From Oopsacas minuta (Eukaryota; Animalia; Porifera), in assembly GCA_024704765.1 (NCBI GenBank), contig JAKMXF010000326.1, forward strand, positions 270,697 to 334,696: DNA of 64,000 bases, given 5' to 3'. The position numbers and the translations under genes are program-made. Of the stretch, positions 3,476 through 47,862 are shown piece after piece. Each line of letters opens with the position of its first letter. Position 1 is the stretch's first letter. A model generated the notes under the pieces. It was not told where the DNA came from, searched no databases, and saw only the letters and a list, made by a program, of their open reading frames with translations.

Positions 3476-3591
3476 AAAAATCGATGAAAATTTACAGATT
3501 CATTTAGAAGTGTTAATACAGTTTATCAGGCCCATTGTTCAGAATTTGGGAAAAAGTTGTATTGTTGTTGATTGCCAGCATTTTTAGTATA

Positions 3592-5458: not shown

Positions 5459-8400
5459 TAACAGGTTGGGTCTATGAGCAACCACCGGAAAGCCTCTGTC
5501 AGAAGATCACCAAAGGACTAAGGCCGTGGAAAGCAGATTTCAATTGGTCGGATTAACCTACTTAAATATATAGAACCACCGAAATTCTTCCAGTTGATTG
5601 GAGAAATTCTATTAGCAGTCCAAATGTTGACCAAGTTTATATCCGAGGGACAGAAAAATGTAATCGCGAAGTTCGAATTATTCGGTGTAAATATTAGTAT
5701 ATCAAAAATACACATGTTCTAGCTCTAAAGTAGTACAATGACATGTATAATTACTAGGTTCTGCATATTCAAATTATACATGGCAATAAATATACGGGGT
5801 ACGGGTATCTGAAATGGTGATCTCGGTCAAAGAATACGGACCCGACGAATTTTACAAGTTAGTTACAATAGGATATGTAAAATTCGACTGTTTAGAAAAA
5901 GATATTTCCATCACAAGATCTTTTTGCAAGTGTGATCCAATAGGAATGTAGATGTCAAATACAATGGATAGATTCAATATTCCAGAGTTCATTTGATGTC
6001 AGGAGTGTGTCAAAAGTTATATGATGCCATACTAGCAACAATGTCTGAGAAAGAGATACTCACGCAAGAAATCTCTATTAAGAAATTAAAACATTCAACG
6101 TATACCATGGAAACACCACTTTAAATATCGAGATCTTCCACCTCCATACAATCAATTGCGTGTTGTTTATGGATCACCACTGTAGACTGTAGAAAGTTTA
6201 TCGAACATCTTTGAATATAGAAGAGGAGATCTGTATGTTTTCTGGGTCTCGTTGAAACCTAGGCGACTATCCAAATACATCAGATGCATGGATACCGCCC
6301 TGCTATTAAACCGATCGACATACACCCAGCTTTGAGATCAACGATAATTGTGACATCATAGTTTGTCAGATAATTGCTTATACAATTGTCCTGAAAAATT
6401 CGCTGAAAGTGATAACAATTTTCAGGAGGTTTGCTAACCCAAAAATATATAAGCTATCTACAGAATTCTCTTTACTAAAGCTGAGTACAAGTTTGAGAAA
6501 ATCACGGCCATAATCAAGGCAGAGGATATACCTAAATCTTGTAGATTATCGCAATATGTTTTACCATGAAATCTCTCAAGTAATGTATTGATTTCATTAC
6601 ATCCTTTATATAAGTTTGATACCTTACTTTACTGTGATCAAGACTAATGGAAAAGCACTCCATTATATTCTGGATGGTTGGAAAGTACAAGTTTATACAG
6701 TCGAAACTCATAAGATAGGGAGATCGGAAAGGAGGATAGTATGATATTACCTTCTCCCACTTATACCTTCAACTGAAAATGGATATTGATAAAGGATATT
6801 TCAGTTGTGTTGATTCAATGATATCTATAATCTATGATATTCCTGAGAAACCTAAAGATTTCAAATTCATTATAGCCATAAATAAGTTAATCATACAAAT
6901 CAAGGAAATACTGTGCATATTTACATATGTTTGGTAAATATCAATTGATAATTGCCATTATTTACAAAGAGTGATATTTTAGAAGCGAATTCAGCAGGAT
7001 TCAAATCCACAAGAAAACACCTTTGACTCAAAAAGTATGAGTTGAATTTTGAAAAGCATCATAAAGGGTAAAGAGGAAAGTTGGTACATTTTATATCATC
7101 ACATATAATGGTGAATTTTTTAATGTTAAGTAAGCAATTTTGCATAATATTCTGGTCGAGGATTTGTATTAATATATCCTAATATCTTTGTGATAACAAC
7201 TTATCCTTTTGATTATATTTACATCTCACTTTGTACATTGTGGACAATTCGAAATTAAAATGATCATTTTCAAAAAGTTAAGAACGCCGGAAATTTACAT
7301 AGGTAATACATAGACGACTAATCTGCACTATAAATAATGAAGTAGTTTTGATCAAATTCCAAAAATAATATTAAAGATTCATTCACACAAAATTTTGTAT
7401 GATCAAATTACTCACAAAATATTCGAAGTAAAAATCGTAGAAAAATATCCATGAAATGAATTATATCTATATGAGGGCAATTATTTTTTCAACGATAATT
7501 GCAGGGAATTCTCTAAGATATGTTTTAATGCCTGTTATCAGATAAGAAATTGTAAAAATAACAGTTTTCAACACTTTCCATCACCTTATATAGTTTCTGG
7601 GATCATACATATAAATCCTTCACTATTATCAAATAAATTATCCAAAGCTTTGAAAATCTGATAACTTTGATGTAGTTTACATTTCTTACAGGTAGCAATT
7701 TGCGATTCAGTATGTGGTGGACGAAAGATTGGTAAAACGTATTATATTATACTTAACTCAATAAATTCTTCATCAGAGAGTATGACACAGTCTTAATTTC
7801 TGGTGATTTGCAAATTTTACCCAACGTAGACAACTTCTGACGATAAATTTATGGATTTTTAACTACAGTTTGATCTCTAATAAATTGAGGAAATTCATAT
7901 GTTGTTGAGTACAAATAGCCACAATGTTCTGTCTCTTAGACCATTTCATTACTTTTTTTCTTCAGAAATATCTCTTATTCACGTACGACCTTCAAACATT
8001 TATTAGCTCTGGGATGAAAGAAACATCGGAAGCGGAAATTCCACTTGTTATACCGGGATATAATACTCTAATGAAATCTCCAGTTATGAAAATGGTTTCT
8101 AATTCAAAATATCTAATTTAGCTATACGCATCCAGTTCTCTGAAATGGAGTTACTATAATACGAATAATTATTTCAAACTGAAAAACTGTGGGAACCTAA
8201 TATAATACCACCTCATAATGACAGAATAGGTAAGTAGTATGGTATAATATATTTTATAAGGTTAGGATTATTGCAAGGATTCGAATCAAATACTTTGTTG
8301 TGATTATTATTGAAGCATTTTCACATAGTTTACCTATTTATACAAAATGTTGCCAAAAGGAGATCTGTATCTTTGGGTTTCACCATCCTTAATATGGATG

Positions 8401-8559: not shown

Positions 8560-9200
8560 AATTTGAGAAATATTAATAATATGCACCATATATCTAAATG
8601 ATTACAAACACAACTTTCTCATTTCATTATTTAAATTATATTTCTTATCAATGCGAAAGCCAATCCCATCCATTATATGGGGAGAACATAAATGGAGAAT
8701 TACTTTTAATACTAGTTTCTGATTGGTAGAATTTGTATCCACTCTATTCAAACATTTATCAAGGTATGCATCGATATCATCTTTAAGAAATGCATTAGAC
8801 ACACTATGAATTAACGCCCACCTGAAAACTATCTCAATTTGTCCTATGTAAATACCATAATTTAATATTCTCTTTGCATCAAGATACCATTTGTGCAGAA
8901 AATAACTAATCCAGAGCTAGTATTACCAGAACTGATTATCTCTTCCAGAGGTACGGGACTGGTAGAAAGAGTTTAATGTTGTACTATGAGGACATAGTAA
9001 AATACTTTGTGCTGGGAAGGTTCAATCATTAGAATGATTGAGCTAGTAGCATCTAGGTGAAGAATTATGCTTTTATCTTCAAAACATTTTAATATTTTAG
9101 ATTTGATCTTCAGTATATACATGAATATTAAAGCGGTTATGTCCTTACGGCTGAATGTGCCCTCTAACATTACTACTCACTATAACATTCCAGAAATACT
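8560..9200 (-). mobile_element. Degenerate MULE (Mutator-like) transposase relic
   Basis: Motifs in the expected order across frame breaks: LHLDATSS, KVFYYVL, SPVPL, IEIVFRWALIHSVSNAF...YLDKC, and ILHLCSPHIM (CxxH). Ends not found. Confidence 0.5.
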
Positions 9201-40648: not shown

Positions 40649-41147
40649 AAAGCTCTAAAAGTGGAATAGTGTTTAAACTAAGTAATAATAAATTATAAAA
40701 CATATATGCTTAATTCTTAAAACGAAAAATATTGAGAAACATGCTGACTACGGAATGAGGGTATGCTATAGGGTCTGAATGCATTCACACCTCTAACCAT
40801 ATAAGATAAAGAAGAGTGTACATGCTAACAGAGTTTAGTATTCAGTACTGGAATGCTGAGAATACTTCGGGAAAAGAAAGAATATAGGTTGGAAGTGCAG
40901 TATAAGGGGTAAGTATACCCTAGAGACCTGCTATAAGTTCCAGTGGTTCGATCTTTTTGAAAATTTTACACCGTAGCCGGTTCATCGAGTTGAGTCCAAA
41001 AATGCACTAACACTTAAACATATATGTGCATTAGAAAATTTCGATTTTTCAAGTAGCCAAACTATTTCGGGAATTCTCTGAATTTTGTTGGCTATATTCC
41101 TCAAATAGTTTTCGAATTCTGTTCCTAGTCCTTCGAACTGTCTAATA

Positions 41148-42459
41148 CTGGGTGTCTAATAAGTTCTGTTATATATCAATTCCCCAAAGATTTCAAATGT
41201 ATCCATTGTAAAGCCATGAAACCTTCTATTTTCTTAGGACTTATGTTCCTAATTACACATTACAAATATCATTCAATATTGCCTCTCTTTTTATGAATTA
41301 CGGAAGTTAGTCTGCCCCGAAACTGATGGACAGCTTTTCGCAGCTCCTCCTGTGGGATTTTCTGCCATTCACTCAACAAACTAACTTTGAGGGACTCCAA
41401 ACTCTTGTGAGATTTCGCACAGGCCCTGCTCTCCAAGTTTGCTCAAACAGAATAATCGAGTAGGTTTAAATCTGGGCTTGATGGTGGCCATTCATCCTTA
41501 CTTATGAAATCGATATTTTGCTCTCGGAACCAACCCTGGGATACTTTTGAAGCATGTGCAGGCGCAGAGTCTTGTTGGTAAGTCTAAGGATGGTTTTGAA
41601 AGAGCTTCTCACCAGCAGACGCAATATCAGGCTCCAAGACCAGCTCTCTGTACGTCTGGGAGTTTATTTTCACTCCTTGGGAGACAAAAATCAGGTTTGT
41701 CCGTGAGTCTGCCGACACACCCGCCCATACCATCAGAGAAAGAGGCTTCTAGACTCTATCAATGTACTTGATGCTATCTGGGATATCCTGACTTCGAGAA
41801 GCAAGTATACGGTCGTTTTGACGATTGCTTGCCTCCTCAACCGTGAACAGCTTCTCATCTGAGAAGAAAATCTGATCTTCAGTCCCAGGAGCGAATCAGG
41901 CTTTTAGTTGTATGCATCTTTCGAGTCGCTTACGACGTATGGAGTCATTAAGATGGTGTACGTTTTTCATCTTATAGGACTTCATTCCTAGGTCCTCTAC
42001 AACCAATTTCCGCATCATTTTGTGATTGACACAGAATTCACGAGACATTTTTCGCATTGAACTCCGGGGATTTCTCAGGATTCGACATCTAACACTATTC
42101 TTCAGGGCTGGTGTGCGAGCGGATCTTGGACGACCAACTCGTTTCCTGTCAGACACACTCCCAGTCTCTATATAGCGTTTTATTGTGCGATAGATCAGCA
42201 TGGGATTGACTTTATCATTTTTTAGCCTTTTTAGAATTTCACTGTTGCTAAACCCAGATTAATGAAAAGTGACAATTTTTGGACGAATTTCTTCTAACAT
42301 GATTTTCTGGTAAATCATCAACTTGAATGATATATACTTGGTATAATTCGAAAGAGCGCCAAAAATGGTACAAGAAAATCTAGAAGATTACTTTATAAGT
42401 ATATTAAGAGCTACTGTCTAAGGCGCGAAAATGTATAACAGAACTTATTAGACACCCTG
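41148..42459 (-). mobile_element. maT-type element F, full length (1312 bp), defective, nested in the Kolobok 3' region
   Basis: TIRs C(T)GGGTGTCTAATAAGTTCTG and CAGAACTTATTAGACACCCTG with TA flanks. Motifs RVGRPRS, FSDEK and WPPSSPDLNLLDYS. Confidence 0.9.
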
Positions 42460-42624
42460 TAATGACAGTGGAAAAATGGCGACTAAAAGTTCATGAGAAA
42501 TTGAGGGAGAAGAAATACCATAGAGCATAAATATAACTATAATATAGTAAAAAGGAGTAAATATAACCTAAACATAACTATATTATAAGAAAAAATGAAT
42601 AAACGATTCAGTTTAGAATAGAGG

Positions 42625-45166
42625 GACCTAACTATGAACTGTTGTATCCAGGGCATATCCATATCTTCTACATCCAAATTACCAGCTACAATATCAATAT
42701 GACTAAGACAATAAACATGCAACCAACTATCACAAACATCACAACGAACCCAATTAAATTTAGTATATTAGAAATGCCCTTACCTCTACCCAATACACCA
42801 CTATCGTCATCACCACCACACAACACACATACCTCATCTTTAGAAACAATACCAAAATTGCCCCACTCTTATACTCACTACCTGTTCTTTTCCTTTTACG
42901 TTTAGACTGCTTCATAGAAAATCTCCTCTTGGTGAAATCATGATCAAACTTATACTCTTTATAATAATGGTGTACAATATCTAAACTATTACATAGCCGT
43001 ATAAAAATATTACTTGGGGCTATTCCTAGCTCATGTCTTGCGAAGGGAATTCCAAATTATGTTATGTAGGCTTTCATTTAGATATGACGTCATACCACCC
43101 TCTACTTTATCCAAAAATCAATAGAAAAATATGGGGCCAGGATAGCTAAGACTCGTTCCCTACAATCTTTAGAGAGAGCTCTTGGGTGAGAAGGGATCAG
43201 GTCCCCCAGGGAAACAGCCTTTTAGTATTTACACCAAGAGCTCTCTCCACTCGGACAATACTGATGCATTTCGGAGCAATTCTCGTCAGTGGCAGAAAGA
43301 TGGTAATAATAGCTAATAGTGAATTTCTCAAGTCTGTCAAGCACATATCTGACTTTGGCTTTATAGTATGGCCATACAATGAAGTAATTGTATCTATCAT
43401 ATTATCAGGTAATAAATTCAATGTACCACAGCTAGTGATGTCACTATCATCCCATTTCTCTCTAACAATTGTAGAATCTCTGATGGCCAGATTCCTGTAT
43501 TTTTGGTTTATTAATTTTTTCTGAGGATGAGTTTTTGATGCTGCTAAATCATGCTGCATGAGTGTCTTGTTTACAGTTATGTAATCTTTTTGTTACTCAA
43601 CAAGATGCATTCGTCTCCTCTTCTGGACATGACTAAGGCATTCTTCACGACTTATTCCAGCACCATGTTTCCCATAGATGTCAATTTCTACAAGGACATT
43701 CGACACTTTTGTCATCCCATCAGCTACTGCCGTAGAATATAGCAAACCCTGATCAATAGATTTCTCAAATATCACGGGTGCTAACTTAGACTCTAAAGCA
43801 ACTGAGTTATATTCCCCATAATCCTTGGCCTGGCAAGATTCTTTATGTTGAACTTCCCATAAACGATAATCTTTAACTGACATCTTCTTGTCCTTCAAAG
43901 CCTGTTGTTTGTCTACACAATATCTGCAACCGTTACAAGCGACCTCAAAACTCAGTACCTCGCCAGTTTCGATGGAAATGCCTGCTGCAAAACAGTACTG
44001 TGCAAAGCCTCCCTCGCCTTTGTCAGTTCCTTTCTGGTAAGAACCGTCATAAGAAATTGACACTTTCAATAATTCACCAACTATGGCCCCCTTTATAATA
44101 CGCAATTCTTGGGCTGCACGGTTACAGCTGCGAACAGCAATTTCCATCGAAAACCTTTGATGAATATCTTTGAGTAGAATAGAAAGCTCTATTTGAAATT
44201 GTCAGATGCAAAAAAATTATAGCATTTATAATATCTAACCCACTTTTACCGATAACAAGTCTTCCGCCAAGAATGTGTAGGGCATTATGCGGAAACATTA
44301 TTGTATTTCGCTCTCATTGAAATAGGACTTAGGGAGAGTATAGAATCGGGAAGCAGGCCGACAATGAGAACAGACAATAAAATAATGTCTGATAGAACTC
44401 CAAATTACCCTTCCTACAAAATTTACATAAAGCCAATTGAGATAAACTGTTCTCCAGAATACCAATATCTATGAAGGATTGACCTTCAACCCTTGTAAGC
44501 TTTTTATAGAGAATTTTCTTTACCAATAATATGAATCTCCATTTCTTCATATTCATCATCCACAAAGTTACTAGGAATCATTATCAGATACTGATGATAT
44601 TTTATACGTAGATACCTCCAAAGGAGTCATTGGGGCGTCAGGACTAGGCTCATTATCAGATACAGATGGTATTATATACTAGATAGCTCCAAAGGAGTAA
44701 TTGGAGCATCAGGAATAAGCACAATCAACATAGGAATTAAAGTAGAAAGCTCTAACTCTTCAAGCTCTTTACTTATACTAATTTGACTACTCGAAGGTTG
44801 TGGAATTCGCTTTGTAGCAACTACCTTCTTCCGTTTGGTACTACCAAATATATCCTTTTTTCGAACATTCACAACCTCGGCTACACTACTAGTAGTCGCC
44901 ACAAAACTTACAGGATCAGTCGCATTATGAATAAATTCAAAAGTATGAGGAATATTATGTAGGAAATCAGAATCTGGCATACCTTGATCTCCTGGGCCAG
45001 GGTTCATCTCTACACCACCTATTACCAAGAGGACAGCAATAATACATGTTAGAAGATATATGGAAATGTCCGAAACATCCACTAACTGAGGGGTACGGTA
45101 GTCCTGTCTGATCTTCTTAGATCCCCAAGCGCCTATTGTGGCGGGCTAAGCATCCAAGGATATCAT
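42625..45166 (-). pseudogene. Decayed Kolobok-type transposase: leader with 2A-like motif, zinc ribbon, DDE core, C-terminal PHD finger
   Basis: In order across frameshifts: MISLDA*PATIGAW...LLVIGGVEMNPGP; IDIGILE..L..LALCKFC; VSISYDGSYQK; CNGCRYC; ADG; EECLSHVQKR; HQYCPSGESSWCKY; YLNESLHNIIW; YKSGA; CVLC...WVRCDVCDSWLHVYC. Confidence 0.85.
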
Positions 45167-45351
45167 CAAGAAAAAAAAGAAAAATATATAAAATAGCTAA
45201 AGTATATAAGTAAAGTAATAAGTAGAGGTGTAAATTCTTCTTTGGATACACAAGGAATATAATTTGACAATATAAGGAAATGTGAAATGAAACTAAGAAT
45301 CAATAAGATTACAACAGCCTAGCGGAAAGTACTAGCTGATAATTCAAATTC

Positions 45352-45432
45352 TCTCCCAGTCTCGGGCTTGAACCCAGGACCCCACCTATATGAGGGTGGT
45401 TAAGTTGCTAACACAAACCAATAGACCAGGGC
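45352..45432 (-). other. tRNA-derived segment (SINE head or tRNA pseudogene)
   Basis: A-box-like TGGTCTATTGGTT, a CCACC/GGTGG stem enclosing CTCATATA, and B-box-like GGGTTCAAGCCC followed by GACTGGGA. The acceptor stem and D arm do not close properly. Confidence 0.5.
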
Positions 45433-45700
45433 AACGTAAACAAAGTATTATCACATAAGAATATTTAACAAATGTCAAAAGAACAATAATATGAGGTTTT
45501 GGTGAAAATATGGAAAAATAAAATTTTTGTGACGAATCTAGATCAAAATTCAGAAAAGGAGGTATGTAAAATTTGAAATAGAAGTTAGGAAGTGTCTAAC
45601 GCTGCCAAAAATGCAATAATCCACTAATCGTGAAATTTTCCAGTTTTTCCAAAATTTTGGAAAAAATAGGGTAAACTTACCCCATAAATGCATTAAATAA

Positions 45701-47862
45701 CACTGCTCAACAAAAATTTAGTTGCATTTCTACCAACACTTGTTTTTATCTAATTTTGGGGCGCTGAATCCGAATCCGAACTTAGTTTTTTTCTGCAAGC
45801 TCTAGATTTTTGCAAATCGAGATGTTTAATATTTATTGCACAAAGTTCAAATATTTTTAAAAGTGACATGATTTGTCAAATGATCTTCTGCTTACAGTTG
45901 AAAAACTAGCCTCAAAACAAAAATAGGTGCCAAAAACTTTTATGTTGCCAATAGAAATTGTATTTGTAGACAGATAGGCAAGAAATGTTTAAAAAAAAAT
46001 GTAAAAAACAGCAGTTTGCTGGTAACATGCATGTAAGAATTGATTTTTTTTACAAAATGACATAGAAAAGAACGATGGCAATCTACAATAGTAACTTAAA
46101 GCGATCAATGACAAGATGCAAAAGATTCAAATATTCTACAACTATGGACAAAATTTCCTCTTATAACTTCTGCGTTTGTACGCTTTGTGAGGACAGTCAC
46201 GTTTAATGCCCTAACAATAGCCTGCCATCATATGTCGGTCCCATCAACCTTGGTAGGTTCTTCCACTGTCATGAGATCCTGGTGGAAACGCTCTCCCTGT
46301 TCGTCACTGACAGCCCCAAGGTGTTCAGTGAATTTGTCCAGGTGGCTGTACATAAAATGTACTTTTATGCTCATGTTGCATCCTAAATCACGAAACCCTG
46401 AGAGCATCTTGGATACAAGCATTTCATAGTTTGGACCCTTTCTGTTACTAAGAAAGTTCTGTATAACATCCACAAAAGATAGTCATGCAGCTTTCTCCTT
46501 GATATTCATTTTCTGAATGAAGTTATTGTCGCGAATAAGTGCACGTATCTGTGGTCCAACAAACACTCCTGCTTTGATTTTATCATATGACAAAGCAGGG
46601 AAAGTATACACAAGATGATGAAAGGATTCATTGTCAGGATTTAGAGCTTTAACGAACTGCTTCATGAGACCTAGCTTGATGTGCAGGGGCGGAAAAACAA
46701 TTTTGTATCTGCTTCCGATTGGGTCGTGTGTAAAGTTAGGCATGCCAGCTTGAAATGTTTCACATAAGGGCCACTCCTTCTGTGTCCAATGTTTTTCACG
46801 TGCTCTGCTGTCCCACATGCACAGATAACATGGAAATTTAGTGTATCCTTTTTGCTAACATAGCAGAAAACTAACCATTTTGAGGTCAACACAAATGATC
46901 CAGTTGTGATCATGATATCCGAGTAAATCCATAACAATTCTAATGTCATCATGCTGTTCCTTCAAGACAGTGGAGTGACCAACTGGAACAGTTCCATAAA
47001 TATTTCCATTGTGCAAAAGAACACACTTGAGGCTGGGCTTGGAACTGTCCAAAAACAATCGCCTTTCTCGCGGATCATATGAGGAGATACCCAGTTGTCC
47101 GAGAAGACCAGGAACATCGTTGCAATATACCAGCTTATTTTCCACTGAAAAATAGGGTAGAAGGAATTCTTCTCTTTTTCGAAAAAAGGAAAACCTCTAC
47201 AGTTCGATCCAGCACCTGTTTTTCTTTGAGCGTGGAGGCTAAGAGCTCAGCTGATAGTTTAGGCAGATCTAAATCACGTACTAAGTCATTCAGTTCTGAT
47301 TGATTAAACTGCTAGTGGACAGTTACTCTGGTTTCACAAGAAGAATCTTCAGATTCTGATTCTGTGTCTATTTTTTGATATTCCATTTCTACGATCTCTT
47401 CCCTTTCCAATTCACTTTCGTCATCATCAGGAATAGCAAAACCACTAAAGGCCGGAGGAGGAAGTCTATCAGAGTGCGGGACAGGTCGTATAGCTGATAG
47501 TATACTAGGATGACAAAGCACACACAAATAGCCTTATCTTTGAAAACCTGTTGAGTAATTAGGCCTGCAAAATATTCATTTACCACGTGCTCATCATTCA
47601 GCTATGACCAACAACTGTTCACAATGGATCCAGATGATGCATACAAAAAGAAAAATGGCTTGATAGATAAAAAATATTTGGTGGAGATCAGAATTATGTA
47701 CTAAATAAGTACCACAAACGAAAAAATTTAAATTGTCGATTGCATGAAAACTAGAGCATGCAGAAAGAAACTGATCGCAGATTTGAAATCAGCATCCCAA
47801 AATTATATAGAATCAGTTAAAAAATCTCATGCAACAAAAAATGAAAAAAATGTTGAGCAGTG
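45701..47862 (-). mobile_element. Chapaev3-type (CMC) DNA transposon, 2162 bp, internally deleted and defective
   Basis: TIRs CACTGCTCAACA and TGTTGAGCAGTG with TAA duplicated on both sides. Motifs RPVPHS, LFLDSSK.SLKCVLLHNGN, WIICVDLKMV, WDSRA, PPLHIKLGLMKQFVKAL, MSIKVHFMYSHLD and SDEQGERFHQD. The N-terminal zinc-finger region appears deleted. Confidence 0.88.

What the first reader, a model, noticed from the sequence alone, without database searches (positions are those of the whole stretch)
44993..45166. 2A/StopGo-like leader at the N-terminus of a Kolobok-type DNA transposase
Seen in sequence: inside TIRs with an ATAA duplication, about 520 bp from the 5' end, the minus strand reads MISLDA*PATIGAWGSKKIRQDYRTPQLVDVSDISIYLLTCIIAVLLVIGGVEMNPG|P. 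It then runs through a low-complexity linker, with a few frameshifts, into the zinc ribbon and DDE core. Established: D(V/I)ExNPG|P causes ribosomal skipping in viruses, and 2A-like motifs occur at ORF starts of non-LTR retrotransposons and in sea-urchin NLR proteins, where they can double as signal sequences. Inference: this family may release the transposase from a hydrophobic leader by StopGo, or split it between membrane/secretory and nuclear pools as a dosage control. I know of no description of this in a cut-and-paste transposase, but I could not search. Caveat: the consensus D is G here, so skipping may be weak or absent.
Basis: partly seen in the sequence, partly recalled or inferred. 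Interest (0 to 1): 0.85.

Follow-up and report, generated by a model that had tools for sequence, protein, structure and literature searches.

The report
2A-like leader on Kolobok transposase
A dead copy of a cut-and-paste (Kolobok) DNA transposon starts its transposase gene with a roughly 57-residue hydrophobic leader ending in the ribosome-skipping motif NPG|P; intact relatives in other genomes keep this leader in one reading frame with the enzyme, so it is a genuine feature of a kind previously reported only for retrotransposons, viruses and some host genes.

Summary
Window 45166-44993 (minus strand) reads a Met, a TAG at codon 7, a hydrophobic stretch and GGVEMNPG|P. It lies 517 bp inside a 17-bp TIR that has a 4-bp ATAA duplication.

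The window copy is a pseudogene. The leader, however, belongs to the family:
- Diverged copies in the same genome keep it upstream of the same transposase.
- Two uninterrupted public ORFs (911 and 900 aa) run from the same leader through a zinc ribbon, the PF20700 DDE core and a PHD finger.
- Leader-bearing copies form one clade (100/100). Twenty-five relatives lack the leader.
- Leader dN/dS is 0.24, against 0.20 for the rest of the protein.

TTAA target sites and GG..CC termini support the Kolobok assignment.

The leader is a roughly 60-aa cassette: a WRxRIG box, a TM-like helix and G[G/D][V/I]ExNPGP. The same cassette heads ORF1 of APE-type non-LTR retrotransposons, a second probable DNA-transposase family (C2H2 plus Transposase_21-like), and sponge death-domain/ankyrin proteins. 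G instead of D at -7 is the commonest state in this cassette.

Skipping was not tested here. A published reporter screen scored near-identical peptides as skipping, or as 'falloff with reduced protein'.

I found no prior report of a 2A-like leader in a DNA transposase. I rate it a new variant of a known kind.

The parts
40902..40905 (.). Target-site duplication ATAA (left flank on the + strand)
   Evidence: the same 4 bp recur at 45684-45687
40906..40922 (-). 3' terminal inverted repeat of the element (GGGGTAAGTATACCCTA on the + strand)
   Evidence: (pair I5)
41146..42461 (.). Nested Tc1/mariner-like insertion (31-bp TIRs, HTH-type ORF 41896-42201). It is not part of the Kolobok element
   Evidence: (pair I1)
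42660..42755 (-). C-terminal PHD-finger remnant of the transposase
   Evidence: P0023 residues 871-902; PHD Pfam hits on relatives
42782..44502 (-). Transposase core remnants (PF20700 'Mutator-like' DDE domain; the best ORF is 43593-44147), broken by frameshifts
   Evidence: (E 9e-17)
44345..44445 (-). N-terminal zinc ribbon (CxxC ... CxxC), split by a frameshift
   Evidence: the four Cys are invariant in relatives (C264, C267, C291, C294 of P0023)
44672..44992 (-). Linker downstream of NPG|P, in frame with the leader. It is acidic and Ser-rich, with a basic NLS-like cluster (KRKK...KR) and an ELEELELS box
44993..45166 (-). 2A-like leader: Met, remnant of the WRxRIG box, TAG at 45148-45146 (a Trp codon in homologues), hydrophobic core ISIYLLTCIIAVLLVIGGV, then GGVEMNPG|P
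45167..45666 (-). 5' untranslated region of the element. It includes a tRNA-like fragment near 45355-45440 and a terminal ~100 bp shared with other, more abundant copies
45667..45683 (-). 5' terminal inverted repeat (GGGGTAAGTTTACCCTA on the minus strand)
45684..45687 (.). Target-site duplication ATAA (right flank)

Best explanation
The stretch is the decayed start of the transposase gene of a Kolobok-superfamily DNA transposon. In this lineage the ORF begins with a conserved N-terminal cassette of about 57-67 residues. The cassette has a basic WRxRIG box, a variable spacer, a transmembrane-like helix of about 19 residues, and then G-G-[V/I]-E-x-N-P-G|P. In intact copies translation starts at the leader Met. 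When the ribosome reaches G|P, the hydrophobic helix is still in the exit tunnel, and the non-canonical GxExNPGP 2A-like site triggers StopGo. StopGo releases the leader as a small peptide with a hydrophobic C-terminal segment. The ribosome then either continues, giving a Pro-initiated transposase with a basic NLS-like cluster, or aborts. The site therefore sets, and probably limits, how much free transposase is made. Any unskipped product stays fused to a membrane-anchoring helix. Shown: the architecture, its conservation, the single ORF, purifying selection, and the sharing of the cassette with non-LTR ORF1. Inferred: StopGo activity of this particular leader and its regulatory purpose. The window copy itself is non-functional.
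For: The sequence is as described. Diverged copies on C55 and C199 keep the leader upstream of the same transposase, and the window's TAG aligns with Trp. P0023 (911 aa) and P0176 (900 aa) are uninterrupted ORFs with leader, zinc ribbon, PF20700 (E 1e-36) and PHD. Two further copies, one in the same assembly as P0023 and one in a third assembly, show the leader ORF followed by PF20700 ORFs. P0023 is collinear with the window from 45166 to 42660. In-frame stops lie 3-19 codons upstream of the conserved Met in 4 of 6 copies. Leader dN/dS is 0.24 against 0.20 for the rest. The leader-bearing copies form one clade at 100/100 support. A profile of 13 leaders finds 330 proteins; E, N, P, G, P are invariant among the 13 leaders, G at -8 occurs in 54 of 57 leader-type hits, and the distance from W to P(+1) has a median of 57 aa. 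The hydrophobic core has a KD19 of 2.2-2.7. Published reporter data (bioRxiv 10.64898/2026.06.17.732966) cover close matches. LLLVLLVLLVIGGVEMNPGP, whose last 14 residues are identical to the window's, released the upstream product on western blot ('falloff, reduced'). Four IGG[VI]ExNPGP peptides were classed as skipping. GxExNPGP is named there as a non-canonical core, and the DHAV-1 2A1 GxExNPGP motif is reported as functional (PMC6249498 abstract).
Against: No skipping assay exists for this leader. In viral F2A and P2A no substitution at the D position kept activity (bioRxiv 10.64898/2026.09.24.754024). The nearest tested peptide showed no downstream product in HEK293T cells, and two similar peptides were classed as non-skipping. 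No RNA run holds the locus. All copies in this genome are broken, so one ORF in this genome's own lineage is inferred from overlapping frames and from intact copies in other assemblies. The host organism is not identified.
Confidence: 0.62

Rival explanations
1. The site acts as an attenuator only. It works mainly as an abortive termination ('falloff') point, so most ribosomes release the leader and never make transposase. On this reading the cassette is a built-in translational brake against transposase overproduction, and perhaps a source of a functional micropeptide, rather than a device that frees the enzyme from its leader.
For: The tested peptide that shares its last 14 residues with the window gave only the upstream product, with reduced protein levels. 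Odon et al. proposed that 2A down-regulates the downstream product (PMC3708506). The N-terminal WRxRIG box is conserved, which suggests that the released peptide itself matters.
Against: An active transposon still needs some transposase. Other IGG[VI]ExNPGP peptides were classed as skipping. The reporter used 20-mers in human cells, not the native leader in its host.
Confidence: 0.22
2. The leader is a plain signal-anchor or transmembrane leader without recoding. NPGP is merely a conserved helix-breaking end of a membrane anchor, and the transposase is made as a membrane-tethered fusion.
For: The strongly hydrophobic 19-mer (KD 2.2-2.7) is preceded by a net-positive N-terminal part in four of the five leaders scored. 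D at -7, essential in viral 2As, is absent.
Against: E, N, P, G, P are invariant and G is nearly invariant at -8 in hundreds of leaders attached to unrelated proteins, which is the 2A signature and not a signal-anchor requirement. A nuclear DNA enzyme tethered with its catalytic part on the far side of a membrane would be inactive. Close peptides show StopGo-type release.
Confidence: 0.08
3. The leader is an annotation or chance artefact. It is a fragment of a non-LTR retrotransposon 5' end that happens to sit upstream, or the true transposase start lies downstream so that the leader is not translated with it.
For: The same cassette heads ORF1 of APE-type non-LTR elements. The public ORFs were called by automatic gene finders.
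Against: The leader and enzyme are continuous over 900-911 codons in two copies that are 66% identical over the first 330 residues (76% overall). The next Met in P0023 is about 220 residues downstream. The leader is under purifying selection. The leader is conserved in position across copies from at least four assemblies and is confined to one clade.
Confidence: 0.05

Closest known systems
N-terminal 2A-like sequences of APE-type non-LTR retrotransposons (Heras 2006; Odon et al. 2013, PMC3708506; ORF1p/ORF2p cases in bioRxiv 10.64898/2026.06.17.732966)
   Same: A 2A-like site lies 40-80 residues from the N-terminus of a transposable-element protein. Leaders of the same cassette type (profile hits with the WRxRIG box, hydrophobic helix and G[G/D][VI]ExNPGP) were found here at the start of ORF1 in elements with APE+RT or RT ORF2.
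   Different: The host protein here is a cut-and-paste DDE transposase, which needs no second co-expressed protein. None of the papers read or searched mentions a DNA transposase.
SpNLR2A dual-function 2A-like signal sequences of sea-urchin NLR proteins (Roulston et al. 2016, PMC4981915)
   Same: An N-terminal hydrophobic 2A-like element that can either be released by recoding or stay attached and target the protein to the secretory pathway.
   Different: SpNLR2A is a 26-aa element at the very N-terminus with canonical GDVETNPGP. Here the hydrophobic core starts at residue 34-43, after a conserved basic WRxRIG box; -7 is G; and the cargo is a transposase. Targeting was not tested.
Viral class A 2A peptides (FMDV F2A, P2A, T2A) and DHAV-1 2A1 with GxExNPGP (PMC6249498)
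   Same: An ExNPG|P core preceded by G and by a hydrophobic, Leu/Ile-rich helix at -19 to -10.
   Different: The canonical D at -7 is replaced by G. In F2A and P2A that position tolerates no substitution, whereas the DHAV-1 and eukaryotic GxExNPGP variants are reported active.
Kolobok superfamily of DNA transposons (Kapitonov and Jurka; summarised in PMC9587614)
   Same: [quoted passage not shown]
   Different: Described Kolobok lineages carry THAP, His-Me nuclease, DnaQ or KolX additions. A 2A-like leader plus a C-terminal PHD finger is not among those listed in the paper read.

Membership tests
2A/StopGo class A peptide | C-terminal core ExNPG|P preceded by G at -8 | tested here: met
   The window reads G-G-V-E-M-N-P-G-P. 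E, N, P, G, P are invariant in 13 genomic leaders. G at -8 occurs in 54 of 57 leader-type database hits.
2A/StopGo class A peptide | Canonical Asp at -7 (D[V/I]ExNPGP) | tested here: not met
   The window, P0023 and P0176 have G, the C55 copy has C, and one family-B copy has D. In the cassette -7 is G 29, D 16, N 6, C 3, S 3. This fits the 'non-canonical GxExNPGP core' named in bioRxiv 10.64898/2026.06.17.732966.
2A/StopGo class A peptide | Hydrophobic, helix-prone tract at about -19 to -10 | tested here: met
   Positions -19 to -10 read LTCIIAVLLV. The best 19-residue window, which extends to -6, has a KD19 of 2.68.
2A/StopGo class A peptide | Co-translational separation between G and P in a eukaryotic translation system | not testable with these tools
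   Only indirect evidence exists. A peptide identical in its last 14 residues released the upstream product, and related IGG[VI]ExNPGP peptides were classed as skipping.
N-terminal 2A-like signal sequence (SpNLR2A type) | Hydrophobic 2A-like element at the extreme N-terminus, predicted and shown to act as a co-translational signal sequence | tested here: inconclusive
   A hydrophobic core is present, but it begins at residue 34-43 after a basic box. No signal-peptide predictor or localisation assay was available.
Kolobok DNA transposon superfamily | [quoted passage not shown] | tested here: met
   The window copy has ATAA on both sides. Other ends of the same TIR family are flanked by TTAA (loose ends). 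A related element in another assembly has TTAA on both sides (L073 pair I8). The definition is from PMC9587614.
Kolobok DNA transposon superfamily | Termini 5'-RR ... YY-3' | tested here: met
   GGGG...CCCC in the window and GG...CC in L073.
Kolobok DNA transposon superfamily | [quoted passage not shown] | tested here: inconclusive
   In 15 relatives D401 and D510/D512 are invariant and E728 is nearly so. H652, H664, C667, C675 and H690, which lie between them, are also invariant. I made no direct alignment to reference Kolobok sequences.
Kolobok DNA transposon superfamily | Sequence homology to curated Kolobok families (Repbase) | not testable with these tools
   Repbase is not available here. 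Pfam labels the domain PF20700 'Mutator-like transposase'.
MULE/MuDR (Mutator) superfamily | Target-site duplication of about 8-10 bp (recalled from general knowledge, not checked in a paper here) | tested here: not met
   Only 4 bp are duplicated. The 9 bp on either side differ.

The most novel reading that the evidence does not exclude
The roughly 60-residue WRxRIG box / TM helix / G[G/D][VI]ExNPGP cassette is an autonomous, repeatedly captured regulatory module. Unrelated mobile elements have acquired it independently: a Kolobok lineage, a C2H2 plus Transposase_21-like family, and non-LTR ORF1. So have immune-type host genes (sponge death-domain/ankyrin proteins). In each host it would act as a translational gate, or as a source of a released tail-anchored micropeptide with its own function. 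Its presence on a DNA transposase, which has nothing to co-express, would then show that the primary role of eukaryotic N-terminal 2A-likes is regulation rather than polyprotein processing.
Probability: 0.3. Interest if true: 0.85.

Novelty: new variant of a known kind. Interest (0 to 1): 0.66.

Why it matters
2A/StopGo sites are understood as a way for viruses and retrotransposons to make several proteins from one ORF. A cut-and-paste transposase is a single enzyme, so a conserved, selected 2A-like leader at its start cannot serve co-expression. That narrows the question of what N-terminal 2A-likes do in eukaryotic genes to three testable options: dosage control, dual targeting, or a functional leader peptide. 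Natural intact ORFs are available as test material. The result also shows that the cassette moves between transposon classes. Finally, it points to a conserved N-terminal box (WRxRIG) that screens limited to 20-residue peptides would not see and that I could not find in the searchable literature.

Tried and rejected
1. Link between a second leader family and a RAG1/Transib-like ORF. The ORF lies 1.8 kb downstream of that leader on C99 (PF12940, E 4e-7). I rejected the link because the repeat shared between copies ends 600 bp before that ORF, and in another copy the RAG1-like match lies upstream.
2. TIRs and TSDs of the intact copies L070 and L071 were not found. Only L073 gave a clean TTAA/TIR pair.
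3. Expression: no RNA run holds the locus. The four holders are DNA-type contigs of one sample.
4. The tRNA-like fragment in the 5' UTR gave no tRNA and no Rfam family.
5. The host organism could not be identified. Run names are coded, and Atlas neighbours point only loosely to arthropods or sponges.
Families B, C and D therefore remain unclassified.
7. Earlier scan notes on 2A/NPGP: none.
8. Pfam gives nothing for P0112 or P0065 themselves. Their Transposase_21 affinity rests on weak hits in three homologues and on Atlas leads.
Frame continuity was judged from natural copies only. In the hydropathy script the stop position of the window leader was filled with W, the residue its homologues have there, only to keep the length; the reported 19-residue window lies 27 residues downstream and does not include it.

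Full report
OBSERVATION

- ATG is at 45166-45164 and the TAG at 45148-45146.
- The Gly|Pro boundary lies between 44996 and 44995.
- The element ends are a 17-bp inverted repeat, GGGGTAAGTWTACCCTA, at 40906-40922 and 45667-45683. Each end is flanked by ATAA, at 40902-40905 and 45684-45687.
- The Met is 517 bp from the 5' end.
- A Tc1/mariner-like element (41146-42461) is nested in the 3' part.

The motif is not a chance occurrence. [VIM]ExNPGP occurs 26 times in the 61-Mb assembly, against once for the reversed control pattern. The stop and the frameshifts are not assembly errors either: contigs built independently from four read sets of one sample match 43118-45596 with no differences or gaps.

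WHAT THE ELEMENT IS

The ORF fragments downstream of the leader match Pfam PF20700, 'Mutator-like transposase' (43593-44147, E 9e-17).

The intact public protein P0023 (911 aa) aligns collinearly with the window from residue 1 at 45166 to residue 902 at 42660. The alignment passes through several frame changes. The window copy is therefore a full-length but dead pseudogene.

The superfamily call rests on the ends of the element.
- The duplication is 4 bp, not 8-10 bp.
- The termini are GGGG...CCCC.
- Another end of the same TIR family in this genome is flanked by TTAA.
- Read contigs from other copies end in ...ACCCC followed by TTAA (table 7).
- A related element in another assembly (L073) has TTAA + GGTTCAAGTATCCTCTA ... 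TTAA. It is 4.7 kb long, and its Met is 595 bp from the end.

TTAA duplications with 5'-RR..YY-3' termini define Kolobok (PMC9587614).

An alignment of 15 relatives shows D401, D510/D512 and a nearly invariant E728. [quoted passage not shown] There is also an invariant N-terminal CxxC...CxxC ribbon and a C-terminal PHD-type Cys/His set. This is consistent with Kolobok, but I made no direct comparison with reference Kolobok sequences.

IS THE LEADER PART OF THE FAMILY?

By DNA the leader is single-copy in the assembly. By protein it recurs upstream of the same transposase at C55:58.5 kb, at two further C55 copies, and at C199:472 kb.
- The C55 copy has an open leader, MIALELWRAKIGLFNSKR...LLVIGCVELNPGP, followed by a homologous VPKNFDF box.
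- The window's TAG aligns with the Trp codon of that leader.
- The C199 copy is decayed to VIGGIELGPDP.

In the window, the leader and the linker (up to ELEELELS) share one frame. In the C55 copy, the homologous linker, the zinc ribbon and the start of the DDE domain share one frame. The frames therefore overlap.

The decisive evidence comes from other assemblies. P0023 (911 aa, a single uninterrupted ORF on a 493-kb contig) and P0176 (900 aa) both begin MIS[LI]EAWRGRIG... They continue through LL[MI][IV]GG[VI]E[VI]NPGP|PR, the linker, the zinc ribbon, PF20700 (E about 1e-36) and the PHD finger.

Further points:
- Two further copies, one in the same assembly as P0023 and one in a third assembly, show a leader ORF followed by PF20700 ORFs.
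- In 4 of 6 copies an in-frame stop lies 3-19 codons upstream of the conserved Met.
- Between P0023 and P0176, leader dN/dS is 0.24 (64 codons) and the rest is 0.20 (832 codons).
- In a maximum-likelihood tree the leader-bearing copies form one side of a long branch with 100/100 support. The 25 relatives on the other side, including an intact 865-aa copy in this genome, lack the leader. Caveat: two rows in the leader group are 5'-truncated, so their leader status is assumed from kinship.

THE LEADER IS A SHARED CASSETTE

Thirteen leaders from this genome align with E, N, P, G, P invariant. They come from the Kolobok family and from two other repeat families. A profile of them finds 330 proteins (E <= 1e-3) among 1.84 billion.

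Of the best 150 hits, 57 show the full cassette:
- a [WY][RK]x-x-IG box near residue 8;
- a median of 57 residues from that box to P(+1);
- G at -8 in 54 of 57;
- at -7: G 29, D 16, N 6, C 3, S 3.

G instead of D is therefore the commonest state here, not a defect of this copy. The hydrophobic core scores 2.2-2.7 on a 19-residue Kyte-Doolittle window, and the N-terminal part is net positive in four of the five leaders scored (zero in the window copy).

The cassette heads several kinds of protein:
- ORF1 of APE-type non-LTR retrotransposons. P0167 has a GDSL esterase domain with an APE+RT ORF2 downstream. P0076 has a coiled coil with an RT ORF2 downstream.
- Four of 121 members of a large family with C2H2 fingers plus a Transposase_21-like domain. 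The other members start directly at the first zinc finger. The Transposase_21 affinity is weak: E 1e-6, 2e-4 and 0.06 in three members, plus Atlas leads.
- Sponge death-domain/ankyrin proteins listed in a published supplement.

The cassette is thus modular and has been joined to unrelated proteins several times.

HOW IT MOST LIKELY WORKS

Established knowledge: at a 2A site the ribosome pauses with Gly in the P site, the nascent chain is hydrolysed, and translation may resume at Pro (PMC12846837; PMC4981915).

In this leader the hydrophobic helix ends six residues before G|P. It is therefore still inside the exit tunnel when the decision is made. Three outcomes follow.
- Release gives a roughly 57-67-residue peptide with a hydrophobic C-terminal segment.
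- Continuation gives a Pro-initiated transposase with a conserved basic cluster 40-60 residues downstream.
- Failure to skip leaves the enzyme fused to a membrane-anchoring helix.

Published reporter data bear on activity (bioRxiv 10.64898/2026.06.17.732966).
- The paper names GxExNPGP a non-canonical core.
- LLLVLLVLLVIGGVEMNPGP shares its last 14 residues with the window. It comes from a cockroach protein that starts MGISVQQWRASIGRW. On western blot it gave only the upstream product, with reduced protein levels.
- Four other IGG[VI]ExNPGP peptides were classed as skipping, and two as non-skipping.

Against activity: D at this position tolerates no substitution in F2A or P2A.

I therefore put about 0.6 on a working StopGo leader that sets transposase output. 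About 0.2 goes to the variant in which abortive release dominates, making it a translational brake. Little goes to a plain membrane anchor or to an artefact.

COMPARISON WITH WHAT IS KNOWN, AND NOVELTY

N-terminal 2A-likes are described for three groups:
- non-LTR retrotransposons, 40-80 residues from the N-terminus (PMC3708506);
- a Ty3-like element and several host gene families (2026 preprint);
- sea-urchin NLRs, as dual signal/recoding sequences (PMC4981915).

None of the papers read, and no full-text search combining NPGP/StopGo/2A-like with transposase or Kolobok terms, reports one in a DNA transposase. The WRxRIG box did not turn up in this context in the searchable literature. Subscription journals and Repbase reports are not covered by these searches.

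I rate the finding a new variant of a known kind, of real interest to people who work on recoding and on transposons. Function is still to be shown.

LIMITS

- No RNA evidence.
- The organism is unidentified.
- All copies in this genome are broken.
- Families B, C and D of 2A-like leaders in this genome could not be extended.

Noticed in passing
window 41146-42461: A Tc1/mariner-like element (31-bp TIRs at 94% match; HTH-type ORF 41896-42201) is nested in the 3' part of the Kolobok copy.
   Followed up: partly
window 45355-45440 and 45567-45683: There is a tRNA-like (T-arm/B-box-like) fragment in the 5' UTR; ARAGORN and Rfam find nothing there. The terminal ~100 bp has higher read depth and other flanks, so shorter relatives (possibly MITEs) share this end.
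   Followed up: partly
G000 loci L048-L069 (e.g. C99:413083, C306:248914, C308:317981, C188:609526): The genome holds three further families of 2A-like leaders. Family B is ...LLACIVSILLIIGGIEINPGP|ITPTQD, with 11 copies in a 1.4-kb repeat. Family C is ...DLCTWRNHIGIFNSRKS...LFLIICGDVEVNPGP|RYIG, with 3 copies. Family D is ...LLLLSGDIELNPGP|TGREEF, with 5 copies. Their parent elements are unknown.
   Followed up: partly
L070 6119-6141 / 8699-8721; L071 1024-1041 / 3573-3590; L073 5119-5144 / 7661-7686: An inverted repeat of 14-26 nt pairs the leader codons (WGIST) with the last PHD codons (DLWICP). It is kept in three copies (P0023 and P0176 are 66% identical over their first 330 residues). 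A 14-nt perfect match in 2.7 kb has a chance probability of roughly 0.01 (my estimate). It could be 5'-3' RNA pairing or a subterminal binding site, or coincidence.
   Followed up: no
P0065, P0112, P0178, P0287 (public proteins): The same leader cassette is fused directly upstream of the first C2H2 finger in 4 of 121 members of a large animal family. That family has weak Transposase_21 (CACTA/CMC-type) affinity, making it a second probable DNA-transposase host.
   Followed up: partly
Supplement of bioRxiv 10.64898/2026.06.17.732966 (XP_064388148.1, XP_064395439.1): Sponge death-domain/ankyrin proteins start MGI[ST]VELWRARIGLF and carry LLLLAGD[VI]ESNPGP about 100 residues in. The N-terminal box therefore also accompanies 2A-likes on host genes.
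   Followed up: no
L041 6899-8965 (G000:C99): An open 689-aa ORF has a RAG1/Transib-type recombinase match (PF12940, E 4e-7). It is a separate element and is not linked to the neighbouring 2A-like leader.
   Followed up: yes
window 44600-44740: A tandem duplication of about 75 bp lies in the linker (PDAP[IM]TPLE[LV]S... twice, in different frames).
   Followed up: no
G000:C55 at 29 kb, 58 kb and 109 kb (L034-L036): Three near-identical copies of the leader region share the same upstream 131-aa ORF. They look like segmental duplicates rather than independent insertions.
   Followed up: no
window 46187-47145: A run of minus-strand ORFs (e.g. ...FPPLHIKLGLMKQFVKAL...) just outside the element looks like another transposon-derived coding remnant.
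   Followed up: no
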